Assembly (NCBI GenBank): GCA_001179505.1
Contig: CDMY01000170.1
Location: 62,001-126,000 of the forward strand
DNA length: 64,000 bases
Origin: Vitrella brassicaformis CCMP3155
Taxonomy: Eukaryota; Protista; Chromerida
Direction: 5' to 3'
Part shown: positions 8,143-20,202 of the stretch, in pieces
Position numbering within the stretch: position 1 is the first letter of the stretch
Layout of the letters: every line of letters begins with the position of its first letter
Program-made: the position numbers and the translations under genes
The notes under the pieces: model-generated
Databases searched by the model: none
Seen by the model: only the letters and a program-made list of their open reading frames with translations
What the model was told of the DNA's origin: nothing

Positions 8143-11100
8143 ATGAGTTGGAGCCGCAAGCCGCCCTCCCCCTCCGTCGAGCCGTCCCTGCCGCCCCTGC
8201 CGACCGGCGTCCATCGGCCACAGGCGGGGAGGAGCAAACAAGAGAAGTCTCGCAGGGGGTCCCAGTCGAATGTCAACATAGCCCCGCCACCCTTCCAGAT
8301 GTGTGTCCAGGTGCCGCAGCTGGAGCCATCGGCCGCCAGTGAGGACTGGAGCTTCAACCCCAGGCTGGTTCCGGCCAGCAATGTGTCGGTGTCCAGCGGT
8401 GACAGCGGGCAGGATGGCGGCAGCACCTCGGGTGGTCAGAGTGGTGTGGGGCGGGGCAGCAGAGGCAGGCACGGCAAGGGCAAGAGGGAGATGGACCACC
8501 CAGCTGAGGACTACGACGCGCCACTCTACCCGCTGCCCATCATGCCTATCGCCCCGCCTCTTCCCCCCACCGTCAGACGTGATCAACTGCCTGACGAGAC
8601 CCCTCCCCACACCGACACACCACTCGCCAGCCCTCTCAACGACACCCAGACTGCCGAGCAGACACGCACTCTCTGGAGAGGCGGGGAGAGCTTCTCTGGC
8701 CGATCGTCGCTCGAGTCCGGGTCCAGACGGGCCATGACGTCCGAGTCGATCCTGGTGGAGAGCAGACGGGCGTCGGTGGAGCTGCCGGGCGCCAGCGGGG
8801 AGGCCGCACCCCTGACGCCCATTGTGGTCGGTGGTCTGCCGAATGAGATGCTGACTCGCATCGTGTGCGAGTACCTGGACGTGTGTGGCGTCGGGCGGAT
8901 GGGCGGTGTGTGTTGGAACATGCGGCGGCTGATGTACGCCCAGCGGTGGGTCAAGAAGTGTGTCTTGAAGGGCGGCGTCCTGCCCTCACAGAGAAAGAGG
9001 TAGGTGCAGTACACACGAGACAGACAGACAGACAGACCTTTCCCATATTCTTTTGCTTCTGTGCATCCCTGATGAATGGAATGTCTGCCTGCCTGTGTGT
9101 GTGTGCGCTGTGTGTCAGGTTCTGGTTGCTGTATTGTGCGGACGTGCCATCGCTACAGCGGCAGGTCGCCAAAGAGCTGCACATGACCGACATGCTCGGC
9201 TCACCTTCCAACACCAGTACCCATCCCGCCCGCCCCACTCTCTCCAAGGGCCCTTCTCTGTTTGGCCTCGGGTCGCTCGTCATGAACGGCGGCAGCAGCA
9301 CGTCGCCCTCACGCGGCAGAGGGGGCGACGGGGGGTCGCTGGGAGACCATTTGTATGAGTATTTGGCGGGCGTGCCGCTGGACGATAGTCGCTCGGACGA
9401 GATACGCAGAGATGTCTCCAGGACATTCCCGACGCACCCTAGGTCACACACGCATACACACAAAGAGGCAGGCACACAAATGGAAGTTTGTATGCATGTG
9501 GTCGCGTATGTGTTTCAGGTTTCGTAGTCGCGACAGCGAGGGTCAGTTGTGGCTGTATTCTGTGCTGCACGCGTTGGTGGCCCTCGACCCAACTGTGGGC
9601 TACTGCCAGGGAATGAACTTTCTTGTCGCCGGTACACCACCACACACCCCACACACACCGCACACGCCGCACACAGCAACCACAGGAACGATTCCCATCC
9701 TCCCGTCTGACCGTCCCTGTGTGTGTGGTGTGTGCATCAGGGCTGCTAATTCACTTGGAGTGTCCCGTATCTGCGTTTTGGATGGCGCTGGCGGTGCTGC
9801 GCCACTTCGACTTTGCCCTCATCTTCTCGCCAGGCGTGCCCCTCCTCTCATGCAGGCTCTACCAGTTCTCAAACATCGTCAGGTGCGCACACACACACAC
9901 ACAGACAGACAGACGGACCGGGTTGCGGGATGATTGGTGTCTTTGCTTGTGTGCTGTTCAGGAATCACCTGCCCGATCTGTGGCACCACCTGCACCGCAA
10001 TTCGCTCAATGTCGACTTCTTCGCTCACCAGGTGCGCACACACGTCCCCTCGCACACAGACACGCATGCTGGCACGGTGTCGTCATTGTGTGTTTGGCCC
10101 GTTTCATCGTTGGTTCAGTGGTTCATGACGATATTTGCTTACTACCTTGAGCCGAGCATATTGGGTCTGGTGTGGGATCTGTTCTTCGTGGCGGGGTGGA
10201 AGATGCTCTTTAAAGTGGGCGTCACGCTGCTCGCCTCGCTGCGCCCGACACTCCTGGCACTTGATGTGGAGGGCATGCTCAGAATCGTGCAGGTATGTGT
10301 TTGTGTATCGTAACACGGGAATGTGTGTATGGGTGTGTCTGTGTGTGTGTGTGTTGGCTTTTGTATGTGTAGAGCTCGAAGCGTGCGGTGGAGATGGAGG
10401 AGGGAGGGGCTTATCGCCAGTTCCTGGCCAGCGTGGCCAGCTACAAGGTCACCAACGCGCAGCTGCGACACTACTGCAGGGAATACCAAATCGTCAAATT
10501 CCTGGTCAGTCTCACACACACTCAGCCCCCCCTCCCCCCAAGACGTCCATCCATCCATCCATCCATCCATTCTGCGTGTTTTCCCCCTTCGTCCACAGAG
10601 TGTGATCCAGTCGGTCCCCCTGCCCACCAACTCATCCCGCACCGAGAACGACAATTTTCCCGCCCCCAACTCCAAGGAGTCCTCCCAAGTGGACCCCACC
10701 ACACTCATGGAGGACCTCACACGCACCTGGACGGCCGGCAGCGGACCCCACGGCGGCGGGGAGCCCCTCCGCGGCGTGGTCGTCAGGGCCCACCAGATCA
10801 TGTTCGTCGACATGCGCACCACCGTCACCAGAGACGTCCCGCTGCAGGGGGTCAGCTACTCGAGGCGACTGCAGATCCGCCGCGCACTGATTGCGGGCAG
10901 AACGGGCGGCAAGAGCGGCGGTCTGGTGAGGCGGGGGAGCGCGCCCGTCCCCCTGTATTACGATGCCTGCACGTCGCCGACGAGCCACGGGGGGGCGGCA
11001 GTGGAGTTGCGTCGCGACTCGCTGATAGCGTTTGTGCCGCCGCCCATGCAATGGCAGGAGGAGAATGGCGATGTGAGCGCCCCCAGCGGCCTGTTTCTGG

Positions 11101-12932
11101 TGACGCTGGTGGGCGGGAGTGAGATGGGCCGGTACAAGGTGCTGCAGATGGAGGGCATGATCAAACTCAAGCTCATGATACACCGAATGGAGAGACAGGT
11201 ACGCATCAAGCCAGAGAGGGGAGGTTCGTTCTCGGGTGTGCTGATGTGTGTGCATTTATGTTTTGCAGACGGCTCAGGACACCAAGTCGCTGATGGACAA
11301 AATCGCACACTCAGAGAAACAATTCACTGCTGTGCAGAGGTACACGCAGACGCATGAGAGAGCAGCCATTACACACTGTGCAATGGTGGGCCGATCGTAT
11401 GGTGTGTATCCGTGTGTGTGTTGCTCAGGGATTACGAGCGGTGCAAGCAGCGTGCCAAAGACATCGAGACGGCGTGGCTGGAGGCAAAGGAACAGAAACA
11501 GACACTCGTAAGCGCCACCACTATTCGCGATAAGCTTCTCCTGTCCATTTCCCCACCTGTCCGCCTCTCTGTGTGTTCACACACAGTCGGCCACACTGAG
11601 GACCCTGGTTCATTCGAGCTCCTCCATCCCTCCCTCACACGCAGCGGCTATTCCCGTCACCCCACCGGCCACAGGCCGCTCAGGGCCCCCAGTGGATTTC
11701 CCCTTCCGGCCGCCTCTCTCGCCACTCACACCGCCATCATCTCTATCGCGCCAACAGGCCAACTTCTCGGCGCCCCCAACGCCCATGAACGACAACAAAC
11801 TACAAGATGACGGCGATTCGGCTGACGGCATTAGTGGTGGCCCGCTGCAGCGTGCCATAGGCGGCCGGCCGCCCAAGAGTCCTGAGAAGCTGCTGGCGGC
11901 ACGGCTGCCATCGCCCCCGCCCTTCCAGACGCTCCCAATGCCGGCGTTCGACCAGCACACGACGCATGACCACGACGGCAATGGCGAGTCCACCGTGCCC
12001 CACGCATCATCAGCCATCTCGCTGCCTGTGGCCCGCCAGAACAGGGCGATCAGCCCCGACCACTCGTCTGCCGGTGAGGACCATCTGTCGTCCCCTGGAG
12101 GGACGGCAGCCCACCACGACGCTCCCTCGCCGTCTGTCAGTGTGACGGGCCGGCTGTCACTGGCGGAGCTGGCGAGGACGGGGGTGAGCCACATCTCGAG
12201 GTCGCTGTCGAGCAATCTCTTCAAGCCGGGCGGCATGTGGGATGTCAGCAGCCCGTCGGCGGCCGGGGGGGCCCGCGGGACCAGAGGCAGCAGTGGTGGG
12301 CAGAGGAAGGGCGACCAGGGCATGATCATGCAGTGCCTTCAAAAGGTAACAACGGACATCCGTTGCGTGTACACGTTGACACACACGTGTGTGTGTGTGT
12401 GTGTGTGTGCAGGTGATTCAGGCTGAGAGGGCGTTCGATAGCGTCAACATGGAGAAGAAGGAGTCCCTTCGGCAGCTGCACGACACAGAGGAGACGCTCA
12501 GCGAACTCAAAGAAGTCAAAGAGAGGTAGGTCTGGCCCTCTGTCGATTGCACACGATGGATGGATGGATGAGTGCCACTCAGACAGACTGTTCATTCTAC
12601 GTATTGGTGTGATGTGTGCAGATACATGCAGGCCATGTATGACCTCGTGTGCGCGCAGGTATGTGTGCATGCCACTCAACCACAATCACCCGCACACGGT
12701 GGATCAGATCTGTGTCGCCGTGTGTGTGTGCGTGTGTGTGCAGGAGCAGCAGAAGCGTGACCTGGTGTGGGCGTACATCCAGTCAGGCCAGTGGACACAC
12801 GCCATCCCACCTACATACCTGGCCGACCTCAACATCGCCCACCACCTCGCCATCAGTGCCACACCGAACAAGGGAGGCCGGAGGGGCTCTCACAAGCTGC
12901 CGCCCCTCGCACCACAATTAGCCAATACATGA
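8143..12932 (+). CDS. Rab-GAP TBC-domain protein with an N-terminal F-box-like motif and C-terminal coiled coils
   Basis: TBC motifs: IRRDVSRTFP, YCQGMNFLVA, WFMTIFAY, VWDLFFVAGWKMLFKVG. F-box-like LPNEMLTRIVCEYLDVCGVGRMGGVCWNMRRL at about 8837-8932. Last exon ends PQLANT* at 12932. Confidence 0.88.
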
Positions 12933-13149
12933 ATCGATGAGCAAATCAGTGGTGCCTCATGGCATTGTGTAGAGAGGCACAGACAGCCGGGTGACAGAGT
13001 CTGACCGACTCGGAGAAGGCCCTCTGGGAGGATGAGTAGATGAGCATCGCGCAACGTGGCTGGTACCAGTTCGCTGCCACAGTGTGGATTCGAGTTCTGG
13101 CCGAATCCTGGCCTGTGGGCGATGGGGGCCCCCTTCCGCAAGACAAAAA

Positions 13150-15506
13150 ATGCGTTTCAATTTGTTGGCGGCGTTTTGCATGGTCCTTGCAGTGAGGCTG
13201 GGAGCAGCTGGCGTCCTCCCTTGTTCTTCCTCAGCTGAGCAACTACTTGGGCAGTGCGTACTCGATGCAGAGGGAATGCCGTCCTCGATGCCAATGCAGG
13301 GCCCGGTTCCGCCGCCTTCTCCGCTCCCAATTCCACCACCTTGGCCCGGCACAACCAACTTCCAGGTGCGAGCGATGATGCAGGAAGCCCGTACGGGTCC
13401 GCCATGGTTGATTTGTGGGCTTGCTTCGCAGGAGTTCCTGGATTATTACTACGGCTATCAACGTCGGCCCCTGAGCCACGCCGAACATGTGGAGGCCGAG
13501 GTACGAGCCATTCACTGCTGATTGCATGTTGTCACTGGCAATGGCTCTTGTGCTGTGATTTGAAGGAGATGAAGCCTACGGGAGGGGCGCTGAAGAATGT
13601 GGACATGAATGATGCCGCGTCGATGCTGCAAAAGCTGGAGACAAGTAGGCGACAAATAGGGGCGCGCCGAGGAGAAGACTATGCATGTTCTCCCTCTGTG
13701 TGTGTCTGCAGCGCTGCAGCAACTGCGAGAGGTGAACGCAGTGGAGGACCTGGTACGGACAGATAGAGGGAGCGAGCCGGTATGAACGCCCCACCCATTG
13801 CCGTGTGTTTTGCTGCTCAGATGAACTTCGAGACATCCCGTCACTCCAATAAGGACGTCGTGTTTATCGCCCCGCTTATGGCAAAGAACAGTGTTTCGCG
13901 TACGGAATTCGAAGAGCTCTACAGGACAGTGGAACGTCTGCAGAAAGAGGAGTTCGATATCGGCCCCGGCCATATTTTACCCTATTATGGCCCGGAGCTG
14001 TTTGACGTCTATTCTAATAATGACACCATCAGTTGCCTCCAAGCCTTCCTGCATGACACAATCCCTCTGAGTCGCAAGCGTTTGACATATATGCTTCGTC
14101 CAGCAGGACTCTTGCGGCCTCTGCAGTGCTTTGTCTTCCAACATTTCTACATCAGGGTCCGCTCACCCGAGACCTTCCAACCTGTAAGGCTGAGCTTGCG
14201 GGCAGATATCGTGTATGAAGATATGAGGGACGTCTACGCCTCAACCGACCTTCTCGTTCGCCTCAGCGGCAGATCGTTGATGTATTCCGAGTCATTTCGT
14301 GAGGAATTCTTTGCTCGTCAGGAGGCCAAGAAAGGACAAGCCAATTATGCACCGATTATCAAATCGGCGTTCCAGACCTTTCATGAGCTTAGCAAGCACC
14401 ATTGTCTTCGGGATCCTTTCAATTTCTTCGGCAGCATCCTGTTCTTCAACCCTTTTACAAGATATATCGAGATCTGGAAGGTGCCTACAGTTCGATCGCT
14501 GAAATCACTTCTTCGCACCCTCAATCGTATTCTGAATGCGAGGACAAAAAGAAAGCTTCTCAAGGCTGCCCACGACATCAATGTTCTTAAAACTCCATCG
14601 AAAGAGAGGGGAAATCGCGTCTCAGCGAATCAGAGGCGCATTCTTGACCTCAATGACGTGAAGCGAATTGAAGAGCTACGAGTTGCAGCAGGCCCAACGA
14701 CAATCAAGCAAGGAAACCAGGTCGTAGCGGAGCTTGCTGCTTTCTCTATTCGCCAGGCCGACAAATCCAGAGGTCATTTTGAGAGCAGAAGCCAAAAGCT
14801 GTTCTTCAAGATCCTCCATGACAAGTCAGAGCAGAAAAGACCACTGCAATATGTAAGTGAGAAAGTGAGCAGGTCATTGAATAAACCATCATGCCAAACT
14901 GACGTCTTGTTTTGTCCTGCCAGCTTTTTTCTGCCGCTGTCAATGAACGGGTTGCACAACCCATTCTTGGGCATCCGCAGATGCGTGGACGGGCTGAGCT
15001 TCCCCTGGAAAGCTCTGACTGGATCGTCTTAAAAGCTGCGACTATGTGCAACGATACCTGTTCATCCCGTGCCCCAGAGTGTGAGAAAACACCAAAGAGG
15101 ATAAGCATGCTGGCCACCGTGGAGACTCTATCTATCAACCGCCTCAAGGGCCTGGCCAGCGAAGCGGCTTTATTCTCTCTTGACGTGAGCGCTGTTTGCG
15201 TGGTCACAGATCTATTGGAGAAATGCAGATCGATATAGAGGAGTTGATACAGGTGTATTCTATGTGTGTGGCACAGAATGTATTTATCTTTCCTTTCGGT
15301 AACGTCATAGCGGCCTTTGATTCCCTTTATCAACGTCTTCGATCCACTCTTGAGTCGGCGATATACATATATGAGCGCCAAAAAGAGCGAATGGAGATAC
15401 GAAGGAGACAGGTCAGAATATAAATGAATGTGGTGGGTTGTCATTCATAGATGAGCACATCCTTGTCTCTTCCCTCTGTGTACACCTGTATGTGTGCCTA
15501 CAGTAA
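13150..15506 (+). CDS. Signal-peptide protein of unknown family; probably the N-terminal ectodomain part of the STRA6-like locus
   Basis: MRFNLLAAFCMVLAVRLGAAG signal peptide and a Pro-rich linker. Six exons join in frame, including one exon of about 1 kb (13821-14852). TAA lies immediately after the acceptor at 15503. Confidence 0.75.
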
Positions 15507-15717
15507 ACTGAGATAACTCGCGTTTTGACGAGAAGTCTGCGCGCAAAGGTTGATGGCGGTAGACGGCGACAGGTTACGGACATCATTTTCAAAGAAGGCC
15601 AAGCACAGGTGACTTCCTCATCCACCGAACAACCTTGCCTCGCTTGAAGGGGAGAGAAATTGTCTCTTTCCTTCACTGTCTATAAATGGCGTAGGACAAG
15701 TTTCCACTCTACGGCAA

Positions 15718-16765
15718 ATGGGAGAATTTCGTCGCCGCAATTGTTTCGCCGTTGCGTGTGTAGTGGGCTTCTGTTGCCTCAAAAAAAGAGCCGATGACAC
15801 GTCAATTGGGTCCTCTGACGATGTGCCGCTGGCGAACGAACGGCGGTGGAACTGGGTTACGTGCACCTTTCTCGATCTTCTCACGCCGTATGTATACATG
15901 CACATCCATGTATGCGTGCGTGTATGTTATTGTCGACTCTATAGATTGTCCCGTTTGTGTACTATCAGTCAGATCAAGTTTCAAACGGTCACTGTGGTTG
16001 GGATTGTCGCGCTTTCGCAAGTCATGCGGCAGGTCATTATGCTGGTCCAGCCGGAAAAGATAAGCAACGGATTCAGCACCAATGTACGTAGCAATGCAAA
16101 AAACCACCGAAGTTTGAGGACAAACGAGAGGGGAGGGGCACGTCATGTCGTCTGTGTTGTGCCTCCCTAGGTTATTCGAGGAGGGATGCTTTTTGCTCTC
16201 ATTTTGGCAGCGTCTCCACTCTTCCTCGGCAACAATATCCATCAGCCGAGATGGCGGAGTCTTACTCTTCTTCTTCTTCTTGGTAGCCTTATGTTATGGC
16301 AATGTTCATACAAAACCTTCTTCCACCAGTCGGATCGGAAGCCGTGGGTCGAGAACATTCTGCTGACAATTCCCATTATGACCTTCTTTCTTGTTTGGAC
16401 GTCTATTGAGGTTGGTCTGACCAAGACGAAAGGCTGGTTCTACAACATACTCAATCGGGAGGCCCTGAGACACGCAAAGCAGTATCTCAACCGAAGGCGA
16501 TCCTCTACAAGTGATCTACCTGCCACTTCTATGGCCTTGGCTCAAGCTCAACGCACAGGTGTGAATGCAAAGAGAACGCAAAGTGCCTTTGTCTTATTTA
16601 TTTTCTTGCCATCCAGAGCCCCCAGAGCGGCCTCATGCTTCATCACTTAGCGAGGGGTCATCAAATGAGGCCTCTTCTTCCAGAGCGTCGCACCCTGCAG
16701 GGGATAGGGGCAACAGCGTGACAGAGACATCAGCTCTACAGAGAGAAAGGACGACGAGTCGATGA
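15718..16765 (+). CDS. STRA6/RBP-receptor-like protein, N-terminal half (TM1-TM5)
   Basis: Hydrophobic segments follow STRA6 order: ...VVGFCCLKKR; TFLDLL; LILAASPLFL; LLLLGSLMLWQC; ILLTIPIMTFFLVW; then EALRHAKQYLNRRR. In-frame TGA at 16763-16765. Confidence 0.6.
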
Positions 16766-16786
16766 GGTGGATTGTTTCTGTCCACC

Positions 16787-19700
16787 ATGTTTATCGGCTT
16801 GATGTTTTTAACGCTGGTATACCTCATTCGCACTCACGTGAGCTACGTTATGACGATTGAGCATGCCACACAGCAGGGGTTGAGCGTTATACGAAAGGCA
16901 CACGACTCCAAATACGTGTAAGCAGATGTGCAGTACAGGCAGACAAATACAAACCAAACTGGCCGACGACAGCTTCATGCATTGTGCTTCTCATTCTTTT
17001 CACTGCAATTGCAGACCAGAGCTGCAGATACAAGTAAGTGGGTGGCAGCGTGAGATGACGCATGCCATGTCCATGCCATTTCCACTTGCGTCACGTGTTT
17101 GTGAGGATTTGTATATCTGAATGTTATTCTTATCAGTTCTTCCGATTCAAGTTCCGAGAGCAGTGGTCGAAAGCTGTAGATGCCCTCTACGAGACGTACC
17201 CCGTCCAGAAAAACAAAGGAAGCGCATATTTCGTTTCCCTTCCCGGAATGGATGTTTCGAGGCTAACCGACTTCTTGGTGCGTACAATACGGGCCAGATA
17301 CCTATCGGCGGCTCCATAATTTTGGACGTTATCGTTTGTCCTGCTGGTTCGCAGGAAACAGTGGAAGCTCATATTGGGACCCTTCTTTATCGCTTCTTGC
17401 GCACTACTGGGAGAATGCGTCCATCGACTGCGGCGCTTTCGACAATTCTATCGTTCAGTGCTGCGACATCTCCCGCAACCGCCTGGCACCTATTTGATCA
17501 CCTCTATGAGACCTACAGCTTGAAGTCCGGGGGGCTGAAATCCGACACGCACAACTTGAAGAAGCGTGCGTCCAGCCCTCTAGAATACAAACTAGATTGG
17601 TTTCTGAGAAGCCACCCAGTGTACCGGTGTCTCGACATGCTCTCCACCTATTCTGACAAGGATCCAATCCCAAAGGGACCAGCGGCTAGGACGAAAATCG
17701 GCAGGCTTTCCGCCGTCGCTGAGATGGAGACATGCTCGCAAACGACATTCGCGACGGTGCCCGTGAGGTCGCGGGAGTGGGGAGAAGGGAATCCAGATGT
17801 ACAAGAGCTGCTCCAGGTACCGCGCCCGCGGTCAAGAAACATCACATACATTGACCCCTTCTCCCCGAGGCTGGTCGATTTCTTCTACCTTCAGGCATGC
17901 ACACATGCACACGCACGCACGCCAAACCATACAATCGAAATTCATCTAAAGGCTGCTGTCTCCTATTGATGTAGTCAACTGATTACGACAGACGCGCTTC
18001 GTTGTCGGAGATCTCATGGGTCTGGCAACAAGGGATACCGTATCACGTAAGGCTCACTATGGGTAGGGGAATGCCCCTTTGTGTGTCCCCACTTGTGTGT
18101 CTCTGCCATGTGAATGATGGGTAAATCGACGACCAACAGCAATCCCTTACGAGGTTCGGTCAGCGGATGCGGTCGGGGTCCAATCAGTATGCGGTGCTGT
18201 TGAGTTTGAGGAGAATGCGGGATCTTCTCTCATCAGCGGCATTCTTCGGCTTGTTCAAGCATGACCAAAGCGTGCCCATCCAAAGTCTCCTCAAGTATTT
18301 GGCAGGTCAAGCGATTGATCCTGTCGTCAATCAGATGAAAGGTGGGGACACATAGAGGCTCTGTCTTTCACGCCTTTCAGCATTTCCAGTCTTTTTCACC
18401 GCCCTTCTGTCTGATTTCTTCGCCAAACTCATTGATGACGGGGTCGACATTGATGAGAAGATTATCACCTACCTACTTATGAGCGCCATGCCAGAGTGGT
18501 CAGCTTGCTTGTCGCATACATGCACGCAATCCTCTGATGCATGCGTGTATGATGTGCCTTGACGTGCCTTTGGCAGGGTCAACTCTGTGGTCAACTTTGA
18601 CTATATCGATGCAACACTGGATAAGGACCTGCTTCAGGTCAACTTGAGCATCCTCCGATGGTGCCTCCACGTCATTGCACTCGTGGCGCTCATCTTCGTC
18701 GCCTTCCTTCTCATGCGGACCCACGCGGCCTACCTCGATATGATGGACAGGCGGAGCACCGGATTCTGCTTCCATGACCTGCTGCAGCGGCCGTTGTCGA
18801 GAAACCACAGAGACTCGGCGCCAATGCAGAAGGCCAGAAGGCGGTCCATACAGCAATGGAAGGACAGAATGGGAGATGATGAGGGGCCTCCGCCGGAGGC
18901 TCCAGAAGGCCACGAACGATCTGCATCATTGCTGCTCCATGCGACCCACATCTATTTCGACGCCTCCTGCTTTCCCGGCGTGCTCTTTGGGACTGTTCTC
19001 ATTGCAGTAAGCAGGAATCCATACATGTCGATTGCCGCTTTGTGAACCGTCTGCCTGTGTCGTGTCTCTCCCCTCTGTATGCAGTACAACGGTGTCATCC
19101 TTGTGTTTGGCTCTCTCACGTTTCTTGTGCTTTTCTTCCTCTGCATTCCGCGAGTGAGGTCGTGGGTCATCGACTCAGGCATACTGCTGGCGATCGGCTT
19201 TGCTGCCATTCCAATCGCACGTGAAATCTCCCGCAGGTCAGCTTGCAGCTGATGAAAGGAGAGACACGTTCGCGTCACATGCATCTCTCCTGTCTGTCGG
19301 ATGAATGCGATACAGTTATCTATTTCACCATCGGTCTTGCATGATGGACCCCACGACCGGCGAGCCAAGCCGCCATCTCGCCTTCTCAATCGCTTTCCTG
19401 TTCTCAACTCTGGTGAACTTCGTCCTGGGTGTCCTCAGCAGTGTGCGGCGATTCCTGCTGGCCGCGTACTTCGGTTTTGTCAGCGCGTTCAGGTTCGGAA
19501 TCGCCTCTTTTCTCTTTGGCCCTGCTCATATATATGTGTGTGTGGGATGGGTACGTGCAGGTTCGACAAGAGTCCGTTTCCGGGCCACTTCCAGCCCTTT
19601 GACAAGACGTACCAGTCGTTCCTGGCTCTCTGCGAGCTGAGCCATCGCGAGTACAGCCTGCTGTACCGCGCCGCTGCCAAAGTCTTCATGGAGCTCTATC

Positions 19701-19870
19701 GTGAAATACTCGGCAAGAGACCTGATGCCCAGGACGCAACGACGCTTGCTGAGTCGTCTCCCCAATCGCAGCAGAGGCAGGTGATCCGTCTGCGGCACCG
19801 AAACCGGATGTGGCTGGCGGTGCTGCTGTCGAGAAATCCCAGCTTGAGGATGTGGAGAAGAAGGGATTGA
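16787..19870 (+). CDS. STRA6: STRA6/RBPR2-like receptor, C-terminal half (TM6-TM9, intramembrane helix, cytosolic tail) with a very large loop insert
   Basis: C-terminal match to human STRA6 recalled from memory. RHLAFSIAFLFSTLVNFVLGVLSSVRRFLLAAYFGFVSAFRFDKSPFPGHFQPFDKTYQSFL compares with [82 protein letters not shown] compares with [22 protein letters not shown]. All exons splice in frame from CCACCATG 16787. Confidence 0.8.
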
Positions 19871-20202
19871 GTTGCTGCTGCCTTGTGGTTGACTAGCGAT
19901 TGATGAGTGAGTTTTTGAGTGAATTGTGCACACACGCGTACGTGTGGTATCCTTCTCTCTGTGGTGTAGGTATCGTGTGGATGAATCTGCGTAAGCCATG
20001 GGTGCCAGGGATGCATCCACCCACCCACACACACAGACAGGCGAGACAGACAGCACGTCAATGCATGCGAACAATGGGATCGATCGATGTGACTGCCTGA
20101 TTATTCGTTCATGTGTATGTATGCGGCTGACACACAAACATCTTCGCATCAATTCAATGTCCTGAAACTTTCGTGAGTGTGCTGCTTGGTCGCTGTGCAA
20201 CG

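What the first reader, a model, noticed from the sequence alone, without database searches (positions are those of the whole stretch)
13150..19870. A giant STRA6-like receptor gene that appears interrupted at three points (TAA, 1-nt frameshift, TGA)
Seen, break 1: the signal-peptide gene ends at a TAA placed right after an acceptor (15504). The frame stays open for 34 more codons (TEITRVL...FKEGQAQ), then a GT-AG intron (15609-15694) leads in phase to DKFPLYGKWENFVAAIVS. Seen, break 2: adding one base at about 15747 fuses that to AVACVVGFCCLKKR, giving a full TM1 ending in basic residues as in STRA6. Seen, break 3: the TGA at 16763 is in frame with GGLFLSTMFIGLMFLTLVYLI (TM6) and the intact C-half. 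The two later pieces have strong-context ATGs (15718; CCACCATG 16787). Established: animal STRA6 is a 9-TM retinol-uptake receptor with an extracellular N-terminus and a calmodulin-binding tail. Inference: an ancestral receptor of roughly 1800 aa with an ectodomain of about 700 aa. It is now a pseudogene, split into co-expressed subunits, or rescued by unusual splicing (GAG acceptors at 15512 and 16766 would skip both stops) or recoding. A carotenoid/retinoid or lipid receptor in a photosynthetic alveolate would be notable.
Basis: partly seen in the sequence, partly recalled or inferred. Interest (0 to 1): 0.9.

Follow-up and report, generated by a model that had tools for sequence, protein, structure and literature searches.

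The report
Broken giant STRA6-like receptor gene
In the alga Vitrella brassicaformis, one gene for a very large membrane protein, whose tail matches the animal vitamin A receptor STRA6, is still transcribed and spliced but carries three in-frame stop codons and a one-base deletion, so it is most likely a young pseudogene.

Summary
The window is Vitrella brassicaformis CCMP3155 (CDMY01000170.1).

**The breaks are real.** All three reported breaks sit at the stated coordinates. They are present, without any base change or indel, in a DNA contig and in one spliced 9.4-kb RNA contig.

**A and the core share one transcription unit.** Splice junctions 15411|15504 and 15608|15695 join the signal-peptide ORF (633 codons) to the membrane core through a 105-nt exon. 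Frame 0 has no ATG between the TAA and the frameshift. An intact TM1 therefore needs an ORF that starts at 13150. This supports one ancestral gene of about 1,700 codons.

**A fourth lesion.** TAG 18353 lies in a 75-nt segment. The public annotation (CEL93469.1, 720 aa) treats that segment as an intron, but the RNA contig keeps it.

**Rescue looks unlikely.** The proposed rescue acceptors (15512, 16766) score poorly and are not used in the contigs. Splicing cannot repair the frameshift.

**STRA6 kinship is only partly shown.** Only the last ~140 residues match PF14752 (36 bits, cut-off 25). The N-half shows no detectable similarity.

**Verdict.** This is most likely a recently disabled, still expressed copy of a lineage-specific family that pairs an ectodomain with a STRA6-like core. 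Unchecked notes from this scan describe similar fusions elsewhere in this genome. Interest is moderate to low.

The parts
13150..15506 (+). ORF A: a signal peptide plus a 633-codon soluble region, the former ectodomain. Exons are 13150-13500, 13566-13644, 13712-13752, 13821-14852, 14924-15184 and 15277-15411, followed by the stop. It is not annotated in GCA_001179505.1.
   Evidence: Introns 14853-14923, 15185-15276 and 15412-15503 are spliced in RNA contig X6, and the first also in X1. The three 5' introns are inferred from GT-AG ends and frame only. There is no annotated gene between the RabGAP gene and 16802. No homologs or Pfam domain were found.
15504..15506 (+). Lesion 1: TAA as the first codon of the 105-nt phase-0 exon 15504-15608.
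   Evidence: Junction 15411|15504 is in the X6 contig. X1 contig 15508-15606 also contains the bases that the alternative acceptor at 15512 would remove.
15507..15747 (+). Former linker between the ectodomain and TM1. It has 51 sense codons in frame 0, spliced across intron 15609-15694, and contains no ATG.
   Evidence: Frame 0 is open for 56 codons after the TAA (p about 0.05 by shuffling). It has the best coding score of the three frames (0.13 against -0.09 and -0.39 bits per codon).
15745..15750 (+). Lesion 2: a one-base deletion inside TM1, shifting frame 0 to frame 2.
   Evidence: Reading with X at the break gives FVAAIVS-X-AVACVVGFCCL, hydropathy peak 2.55. The RNA contig has no extra base. 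There is no slippery heptamer at the site (read).
15718..16765 (+). ORF B (273 codons from ATG 15718): the rest of TM1, four more hydrophobic segments (three reach the 1.5 peak threshold; the fourth, WRSLTLLLLLGSLMLWQ, was read by eye), and a low-complexity loop. It is not annotated.
   Evidence: Introns 15888-15968, 16084-16170 and 16559-16616 are spliced in X6. Translation is and hydropathy. A 52-codon upstream ORF starting at ATG 15553 overlaps this start.
16763..16765 (+). Lesion 3: an in-frame TGA in the loop before TM6, inside exon 16617-16917.
   Evidence: It is present in the X6 RNA contig and in the DNA contigs with no variant. No SECIS element was found.
16766..18352 (+). ORF C (379 codons): TM6 followed by a hydrophilic loop of about 370 aa. 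It includes the 19-nt micro-exon 17015-17033 and the GC-AG intron 17895-17974.
   Evidence: Joints and the X1 loose end are and the translation. The annotated protein P0003 starts at ATG 16802.
18306..18380 (+). Lesion 4: a 75-nt in-frame segment holding TAG 18353-18355. The annotation treats it as an intron, but the RNA contig retains it.
   Evidence: X6 piece 18140-18497 is collinear with the genome (358 nt on both sides). P0003 skips this segment. The donor scores 1.3 bits, below all 20 known donors (3.2-10.0). The acceptor scores 6.2 bits, which is ordinary.
18356..19870 (+). ORF D (403 codons): the last TM helices and the STRA6-like tail. The part coded by about 19320-19861 matches PF14752 positions 461-604 of 605.
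   Evidence: Pfam scores are 36.2 bits (P0001) and 33.4 bits (P0003) against a cut-off of 25. 5SY1 gives E=0.024. The introns are confirmed by X6, X1 and JGI transcript L001.
19907..19969 (+). An intron in the 3' UTR. The transcript ends at about 20127-20145.
   Evidence: It is spliced in X1, X6 and L001.

Best explanation
This is one former gene of Vitrella brassicaformis. It encoded a signal peptide, an extracellular region of about 680 aa with no known relatives, and a multi-pass membrane core whose last ~140 residues belong to the STRA6/RBP_receptor family.

In strain CCMP3155 the gene carries four disabling lesions:
- TAA 15504
- a 1-nt deletion in TM1 near 15747
- TGA 16763
- TAG 18353, in a segment that stays in the mRNA

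The locus is still transcribed and at least 17 introns are removed correctly. The full-length receptor can no longer be made, because no splice choice repairs the frameshift. The locus is therefore a young, expressed pseudogene.

At most the first ORF, a 633-aa secreted protein, would be translated by a scanning ribosome.

**Shown:** the lesions in DNA and RNA, the exon structure, the physical linkage of the parts by splice junctions, and family membership of the C-terminus.

**Inferred:** that the parts were once one ORF, that the lesions are recent, and that the downstream ORFs are not translated.
For: - **Lesions are not errors.** No base differences or indels appear in DNA-like contigs (X3, X5) or in the spliced 9,356-nt RNA contig (X6). 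Exon lengths match exactly.
- **The parts are linked.** The 105-nt exon 15504-15608 has an upstream junction to ORF A and a downstream junction to the TM1 exon. X1 confirms the downstream junction.
- **The frame continues past the TAA.** The phase-0 exon and intron keep frame 0 open for 56 codons after the TAA. Frame 0 has no ATG between the TAA and the frameshift, so a complete TM1 requires the ORF that starts at 13150.
- **A long open frame.** Frame 2 runs 1,078 codons with only two stops. All four pieces keep a coding signature in the proposed frame.
- **Rescue acceptors are weak and unused**. No recoding RNA element was found.
- **The annotators could not model it.** The official annotation could model only the last 720 aa. 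It did so by inventing a GT donor at 17817 where the RNA uses a GC donor at 17895, and by splicing out the TAG-containing segment.
- **C-terminal family membership.**
- **Leads only.** Other first-reader notes describe STRA6-like cores fused to 545-630-aa ectodomains elsewhere in this genome.
Against: - The RNA evidence is assembled contigs, not reads. Minor isoforms (use of acceptor 15513, removal of 18306-18380, internal transcription starts) cannot be excluded.
- The DNA run identical to the window may be the assembly's own source.
- No ortholog or paralog sequence could be fetched. Relaxed selection was therefore not measured, and the ancestral fusion was not checked against an intact copy.
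- All splice sites and the coding signature are still intact. ORFs B and C begin with well-placed ATGs. Both facts also fit a functional split.
- Four lesions in about 1,730 codons is few.
Confidence: 0.6

Rival explanations
1. Gene fission with surviving function. The stops have split the receptor into a secreted 633-aa protein (ORF A) and one or more membrane proteins (B, C+D, or the annotated 720-aa product). The membrane proteins would be made from internal promoters or by internal initiation, and at least some pieces remain under selection.
For: - ATG 15718 and ccaccATG 16787 have strong contexts, and each lies within about 8-10 codons of where its hydrophobic segment begins.
- The lesions fall at domain borders or in loops: between ectodomain and core, between TM5 and TM6, and in the TM6-TM7 loop.
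- Splice sites and codon signature are intact.
- GC3 rises to 0.62-0.69 in C and D.
- Vitrella genes are packed with a median spacing of 92 bp (PMC4501334), so neighbouring transcripts are merged in contigs. The RabGAP gene upstream sits in the same contig.
Against: - B, C and D lie in exons flanked by spliced introns of the same RNA. No separate 5' end is seen.
- Starting at ATG 15718 leaves only 13 hydrophobic residues of TM1, with basic residues on both sides.
- A 52-codon upstream ORF (ATG 15553) overlaps that start.
- The frameshift falls inside a TM helix, not at a domain border.
- Loops make up most of the protein, so lesions in loops are expected by chance.
Confidence: 0.25
2. The full-length receptor is still made. 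Unusual splicing (acceptors 15513 and 16767, removal of 18306-18380), stop-codon readthrough and ribosomal frameshifting would produce it.
For: - Both alternative acceptors and the 75-nt segment are in frame.
- Skipping the 105-nt exon would also be in frame.
- Some other alveolates read stop codons as sense. This rests on my own knowledge and was not checked here.
Against: - The RNA contigs use 15504 and 16617 and keep 18306-18380.
- The alternative acceptors score -1.4 and -8.4 bits, and the donor at 18306 scores 1.3.
- The frameshift needs a -1 slip, but there is no slippery heptamer. No Rfam recoding or SECIS element was found.
- It would take four independent rescue events on one mRNA.
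- The RNA is identical to the DNA, so there is no editing.
Confidence: 0.05
3. The breaks are artefacts of sequencing or assembly, and the real gene is intact.
For: The 1-nt break lies next to a TTT run. The DNA run that matches perfectly may be the source of the assembly.
Against: An RNA contig from a separate library shows the same bases at all four sites, and its exon lengths match exactly. Several runs agree without one difference.
Confidence: 0.03

Closest known systems
STRA6 / STRA6L (RBPR2), Pfam PF14752 RBP_receptor; zebrafish STRA6 structure 5SY1
   Same: - The last ~140 residues (the final TM helix and what follows it, to the C-terminus) match the family profile above its curated cut-off. 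They align with zebrafish STRA6 residues 485-623, including the ...NPSL motif near the end.
- Language-model features place the 720-aa product next to STRA6 clusters.
- The hydrophobic segments follow a similar plan: about five, then a loop, then about four or five. There is a large loop after TM6, which is where STRA6 binds RBP (PMC3546623 for the 9-TM plan).
   Different: - Profile positions 1-460 are not matched.
- The protein would be about 1,700 aa, against 670 aa for STRA6.
- It has a cleavable signal peptide and an N-terminal region of about 680 aa with no known relatives.
- The TM6-TM7 loop is about 370 aa.
- The organism is a unicellular alga, in which I know of no retinol-binding protein (not tested here).
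- This copy is broken.
CEL93469.1 / A0A0G4EDL0 (annotated 720-aa 'unnamed protein product' of V. brassicaformis CCMP3155)
   Same: It is the same locus, 16802-19870. It carries the PF14752 hit and includes the 19-nt micro-exon.
   Different: - The model starts inside TM6.
- It omits ORF A and ORF B.
- It uses a GT donor at 17817 where the RNA shows a GC donor at 17895, which drops 26 residues.
- It splices out 18306-18380, which the RNA contig retains.
Transcribed unprocessed pseudogenes of multigene families
   Same: The locus has several independent disabling mutations. Its introns, splice sites, promoter activity and codon signature are still intact. Unchecked notes suggest other family members in the same genome.
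   Different: Relaxed selection has not been measured. The first ORF could still give a secreted protein.

Membership tests
STRA6 / RBP_receptor (PF14752) | Sequence match to the family profile above the curated gathering score | tested here: met
   P0001 scores 36.2 bits and P0003 33.4 bits against a cut-off of 25. The match covers only profile positions 461-604 of 605.
STRA6 / RBP_receptor (PF14752) | Similarity of the N-terminal TM1-TM5 domain and of TM6-TM8 to the family | tested here: not met
   Single exons of B, C and the first part of D give no PF14752 match at E<=1. P0003 residues 1-580 are unmatched. Exon 16171-16557 gives no STRA6 signal in the Atlas. The joined spliced N-half could not be submitted to the tools.
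STRA6 / RBP_receptor (PF14752) | Nine TM helices plus an intramembrane helix, extracellular N-terminus, large extracellular loop after TM6 | tested here: inconclusive
   The hydropathy scan finds about 9-10 hydrophobic segments in the right order, with basic residues after TM1. This is a window average, not a topology prediction.
STRA6 / RBP_receptor (PF14752) | Fold similar to the solved STRA6 structure (5SY1) | tested here: inconclusive
   The single-sequence AlphaFold2 model of P0001 has pLDDT 56.8. The Foldseek search of the PDB gave no match at E<=0.001. No family alignment could be built.
STRA6 / RBP_receptor (PF14752) | Binds holo-RBP and calmodulin; moves retinol | not testable with these tools
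   This needs biochemistry. No RBP-binding loop similarity was seen.
Expressed pseudogene | Disabling lesions in the genome, not sequencing errors | tested here: met
   Four lesions are identical in DNA-like and RNA contigs.
Expressed pseudogene | No transcript isoform restores the reading frame | tested here: inconclusive
   The dominant contigs keep all lesions, and the frameshift cannot be spliced away. Contigs drop rare variants, however.
Expressed pseudogene | Neutral evolution compared with an intact relative | not tested
   No ortholog or paralog could be fetched.

The most novel reading that the evidence does not exclude
The locus is a receptor caught in the act of splitting. The stop at 15504 would free the old ectodomain as a secreted 633-aa ligand-binding protein. 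A truncated STRA6-like core would still be made from internal starts. Together they would form a soluble carrier plus membrane receptor pair, arising by fission and analogous in logic to RBP plus STRA6, in a photosynthetic relative of apicomplexans.
Probability: 0.1. Interest if true: 0.75.

Novelty: new variant of a known kind. Interest (0 to 1): 0.33.

Why it matters
STRA6-family proteins are known as animal vitamin A receptors. A family in a chromerid alga that joins the STRA6-like core to a secreted region of about 680 aa with no known relatives would broaden what this fold is used for. It would also point to a lipid or pigment uptake system in relatives of apicomplexans.

This particular copy is probably dead. 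Its value is threefold:
- It records the ancestral architecture.
- It corrects the public annotation, which misses about 900 codons and mis-splices two sites.
- It shows that the other, possibly intact copies noted in the genome are the better targets for study.

Tried and rejected
**Searches for relatives, all empty apart from the locus's own proteins**
- ORF A exon in the 5.8-billion-protein set. The length filter also excluded the 633-aa product itself.
- ORF C exon embedded in a 282-aa stop-free frame.
- P0001.
- Exhaustive HMMER search of 1.84 billion representatives with exon 18578-19006. It returned only the locus's own P0001 and an unrelated repeat protein. In hindsight this exon was a poor choice, because it is mostly loop.
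- Two metagenome scans.
- The scan's own index, searched by sequence.

**Structure**
- AlphaFold2 without an alignment gave pLDDT 56.8 for P0001 and 32.9 for the ORF A exon.

**Other checks**
- The last exon alone against the PDB and the Atlas gave nothing.
- Rfam at E<=1 found no SECIS or frameshift element.
- There are no paralogs inside the 64-kb window.
- Literature: no paper links STRA6 or PF14752 with Vitrella, no retrieved paper reports a STRA6-family member in alveolates or other protists, and the supplements of the chromerid genome paper do not mention it.

**Limits and a rejected idea**
They could not be sent to Pfam or AlphaFold as whole proteins.
- I rejected the idea that the low G+C of 14-18 kb reflects decay of a pseudogene. 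Introns and exons share the low G+C, and so few lesions mean too little time has passed.


Full report
**Where this is.** The window is identical over 23 kb to Vitrella brassicaformis CCMP3155, assembly GCA_001179505.1, contig CDMY01000170.1 (window coordinate = locus L002 coordinate + 6801). The public annotation has a RabGAP-TBC gene ending at about 12932. It then has nothing until a 720-aa 'unnamed protein product' (CEL93469.1 = P0003) at 16802-19870. The signal-peptide ORF and the first third of the membrane core are not annotated.

**Checking the observation.**
- TAA sits at 15504-15506, directly after the acceptor.
- Thirty-four more codons are open to 15608.
- Intron 15609-15694 is GT-AG in phase 0.
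- One added base at about 15747 would join ...ENFVAAIVS to AVACVVGFCCLKKR.
- TGA 16763 is in frame with the next hydrophobic helix.
- ATG 15718 and ccaccATG 16787 have good contexts.

**RNA and DNA evidence.** I laid four public runs on 14200-20150.
- One run (X6) holds a single 9,356-nt contig in which 16 GT-AG introns and one GC-AG intron (17895-17974) are removed.
- A second RNA-like run (X1) confirms six of these junctions. Its loose end defines the 19-nt micro-exon 17015-17033.
- A JGI transcript (L001) confirms the four 3' introns.
- No run shows a different letter or an indel.
- The lengths of the contig between anchored pieces equal the sums of the genomic exons: 417 nt across TAA and the frameshift, and 463 nt across TGA.

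The lesions are therefore in the DNA and unchanged in the RNA. There is no editing and no assembly slip. One caveat: the DNA run that spans the stretch may be the assembly's own source.

**One gene or several?** The contig also contains the upstream RabGAP mRNA, about 3.9 kb upstream of ATG 13150. Contig continuity alone therefore proves nothing. Vitrella genes lie a median of 92 bp apart (PMC4501334), and the gap here is roughly 110-220 bp.

ORF A and the core are, however, tied together by splicing. The 105-nt exon 15504-15608 is joined upstream to the last coding exon of ORF A (15411|15504). It is joined downstream to the exon that carries TM1 (15608|15695).

Several further points fit a single ancestral ORF:
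- The exon length is a multiple of three, and both flanking introns are in phase 0.
- Frame 0 stays open for 56 codons after the TAA (p about 0.05 by shuffling).
- Frame 0 has the best coding score of the three frames there, at 0.13 bits per codon. That is similar to ORFs A-C under cross-validation.
- Frame 0 holds no ATG between the TAA and the frameshift.

With X at the break, the frameshift site reads as a 19-residue hydrophobic helix followed by KKR. It is the second-highest hydropathy peak among the predicted TM helices of the core. Starting at ATG 15718 leaves only 13 hydrophobic residues with basic residues on both sides. A complete TM1 therefore needs an ORF that began at 13150.

My model of ORF A is 633 codons. 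Its three 5' introns are inferred and its three 3' introns are seen in RNA. It begins with a typical signal peptide. The ancestral product would have been about 1,700 aa.

Other first-reader notes report STRA6-like cores fused to 545-630-aa ectodomains elsewhere in this genome. I could not fetch those loci, so they remain leads only.

**A fourth lesion.** The spliced contig is collinear with the genome from 18140 to 18497. It therefore keeps 18306-18380, a 75-nt in-frame segment with TAG at 18353. The annotated protein removes this segment.
- Its donor scores 1.3 bits on a matrix built from the 20 introns of the locus, below every known donor (3.2-10.0).
- Its acceptor is ordinary at 6.2 bits.

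The same annotated model also uses a GT donor at 17817 where the RNA shows the GC donor at 17895. The model was evidently forced around obstacles. Whether a minor isoform removes the 75 nt cannot be told from contigs.

They score -1.4 and -8.4 bits, against 11.9 and 13.5 for the acceptors actually used. The contigs, including the X1 contig that starts at 15508, contain the bases those acceptors would remove.

Skipping the 105-nt exon would also be in frame. The reading frame would still run into the frameshift and stop at 15761. No splice choice repairs a 1-nt deletion inside an exon. The site has no slippery heptamer, and Rfam finds no SECIS or recoding element.

A ribosome that terminates at 15504 would meet ATG 15553. 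That ATG opens a 52-codon ORF overlapping ATG 15718.

**What the protein is.**
- The 258-aa C-terminal product (P0001) matches Pfam PF14752 RBP_receptor at 36.2 bits (cut-off 25), over profile positions 461-604 of 605. P0003 gives 33.4 bits for the same part.
- phmmer finds zebrafish STRA6 (5SY1) at E=0.024, aligned to its residues 485-623.
- Language-model features put P0003 next to STRA6 clusters of molluscs and chordates (0.93, 0.91 and 0.90, with 199-212 shared features). It also sits, more weakly (0.74), next to 990-aa hypothetical proteins of diatoms.
- Nothing upstream of that region matches the family. Single exons give no PF14752 hit at E<=1, and the 129-aa exon of ORF B gives no STRA6 signal.
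- Hydropathy shows about five hydrophobic segments, a loop, TM6, a loop of about 370 aa, then four or five more segments. This fits the published 9-TM plan with the ligand-binding loop after TM6 (PMC3546623), but it is not evidence of homology.
- Structure prediction without an alignment failed.
- ORF A has no Pfam domain and no detectable relatives.

**How it most likely works now.** The locus is transcribed, probably from a promoter just upstream of 13150, and is spliced normally. The mRNA has a 633-codon first ORF that ends at the TAA, followed by about 3.5 kb with 14 further exon junctions. In most eukaryotes such an mRNA would be a target of nonsense-mediated decay. This rests on established knowledge and was not tested here.

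The full receptor cannot be made. Three stops and one frameshift in about 1,730 codons, with splice sites and coding signature intact, point to a recent loss of constraint. About 4-5% of random substitutions create stops, which gives very roughly 1-2% neutral divergence. This is my own rough estimate.

My confidence in each reading:

| Reading | Confidence |
|---|---|
| Expressed young pseudogene | about 0.6 |
| Fission with some surviving function (secreted ORF A, and/or a truncated core from internal starts) | about 0.25 |
| Rescue by splicing or recoding | about 0.05 |
| Sequencing or assembly artefact | about 0.03 |

**Novelty and value.** The PF14752 hit of this protein is already in public databases. 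I found no paper that discusses STRA6-family proteins in Vitrella, none among the papers retrieved for alveolates and other protists, and nothing in the supplements of the chromerid genome paper. The inferred architecture, a large secreted region fused to a STRA6-like core, is a new variant of a known family. This copy, however, is probably dead. The intact copies reported elsewhere in the genome are the better subject.

Noticed in passing
window 13150-16801: The public annotation of GCA_001179505.1 has no gene here. RNA shows a spliced 633-codon ORF with a signal peptide, plus 273 further codons of membrane core.
   Followed up: yes
window 17817-17974: The annotated model CEL93469.1 uses a GT donor at 17817. 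The RNA contig instead shows a GC-AG intron at 17895-17974. The annotated protein therefore lacks 26 residues (VPRPRS...FFYLQ).
   Followed up: yes
window 17015-17033: A 19-nt micro-exon lies between introns of 97 and 103 nt. It is supported by the loose end of an X1 contig and by the length of the X6 contig.
   Followed up: partly
window 8143-13041: The upstream RabGAP-TBC gene (1,219 aa) is in the same RNA contig as this locus. An open frame ending ...LTDSEKALWEDE* at 13039-13041 suggests its true stop may lie about 107 nt beyond the annotated end (12932). That would leave only about 110 nt before ATG 13150.
   Followed up: no
window 14000-18000: G+C is 48-51% here, against 55-62% in most of the rest of the window. 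Introns (mean about 0.49) and exons share the low G+C, and GC3 rises along the gene from 0.55-0.57 to 0.69. The cause is unknown.
   Followed up: partly
window 19907-19969: An intron lies 37 nt downstream of the stop codon. It is spliced in three RNA data sets.
   Followed up: partly
Atlas hit, row 19: A cluster of about 990-aa hypothetical proteins of diatoms resembles P0003 by language-model features (0.74, 188 shared). They may be STRA6-like proteins with N-terminal extensions in another algal group.
   Followed up: no
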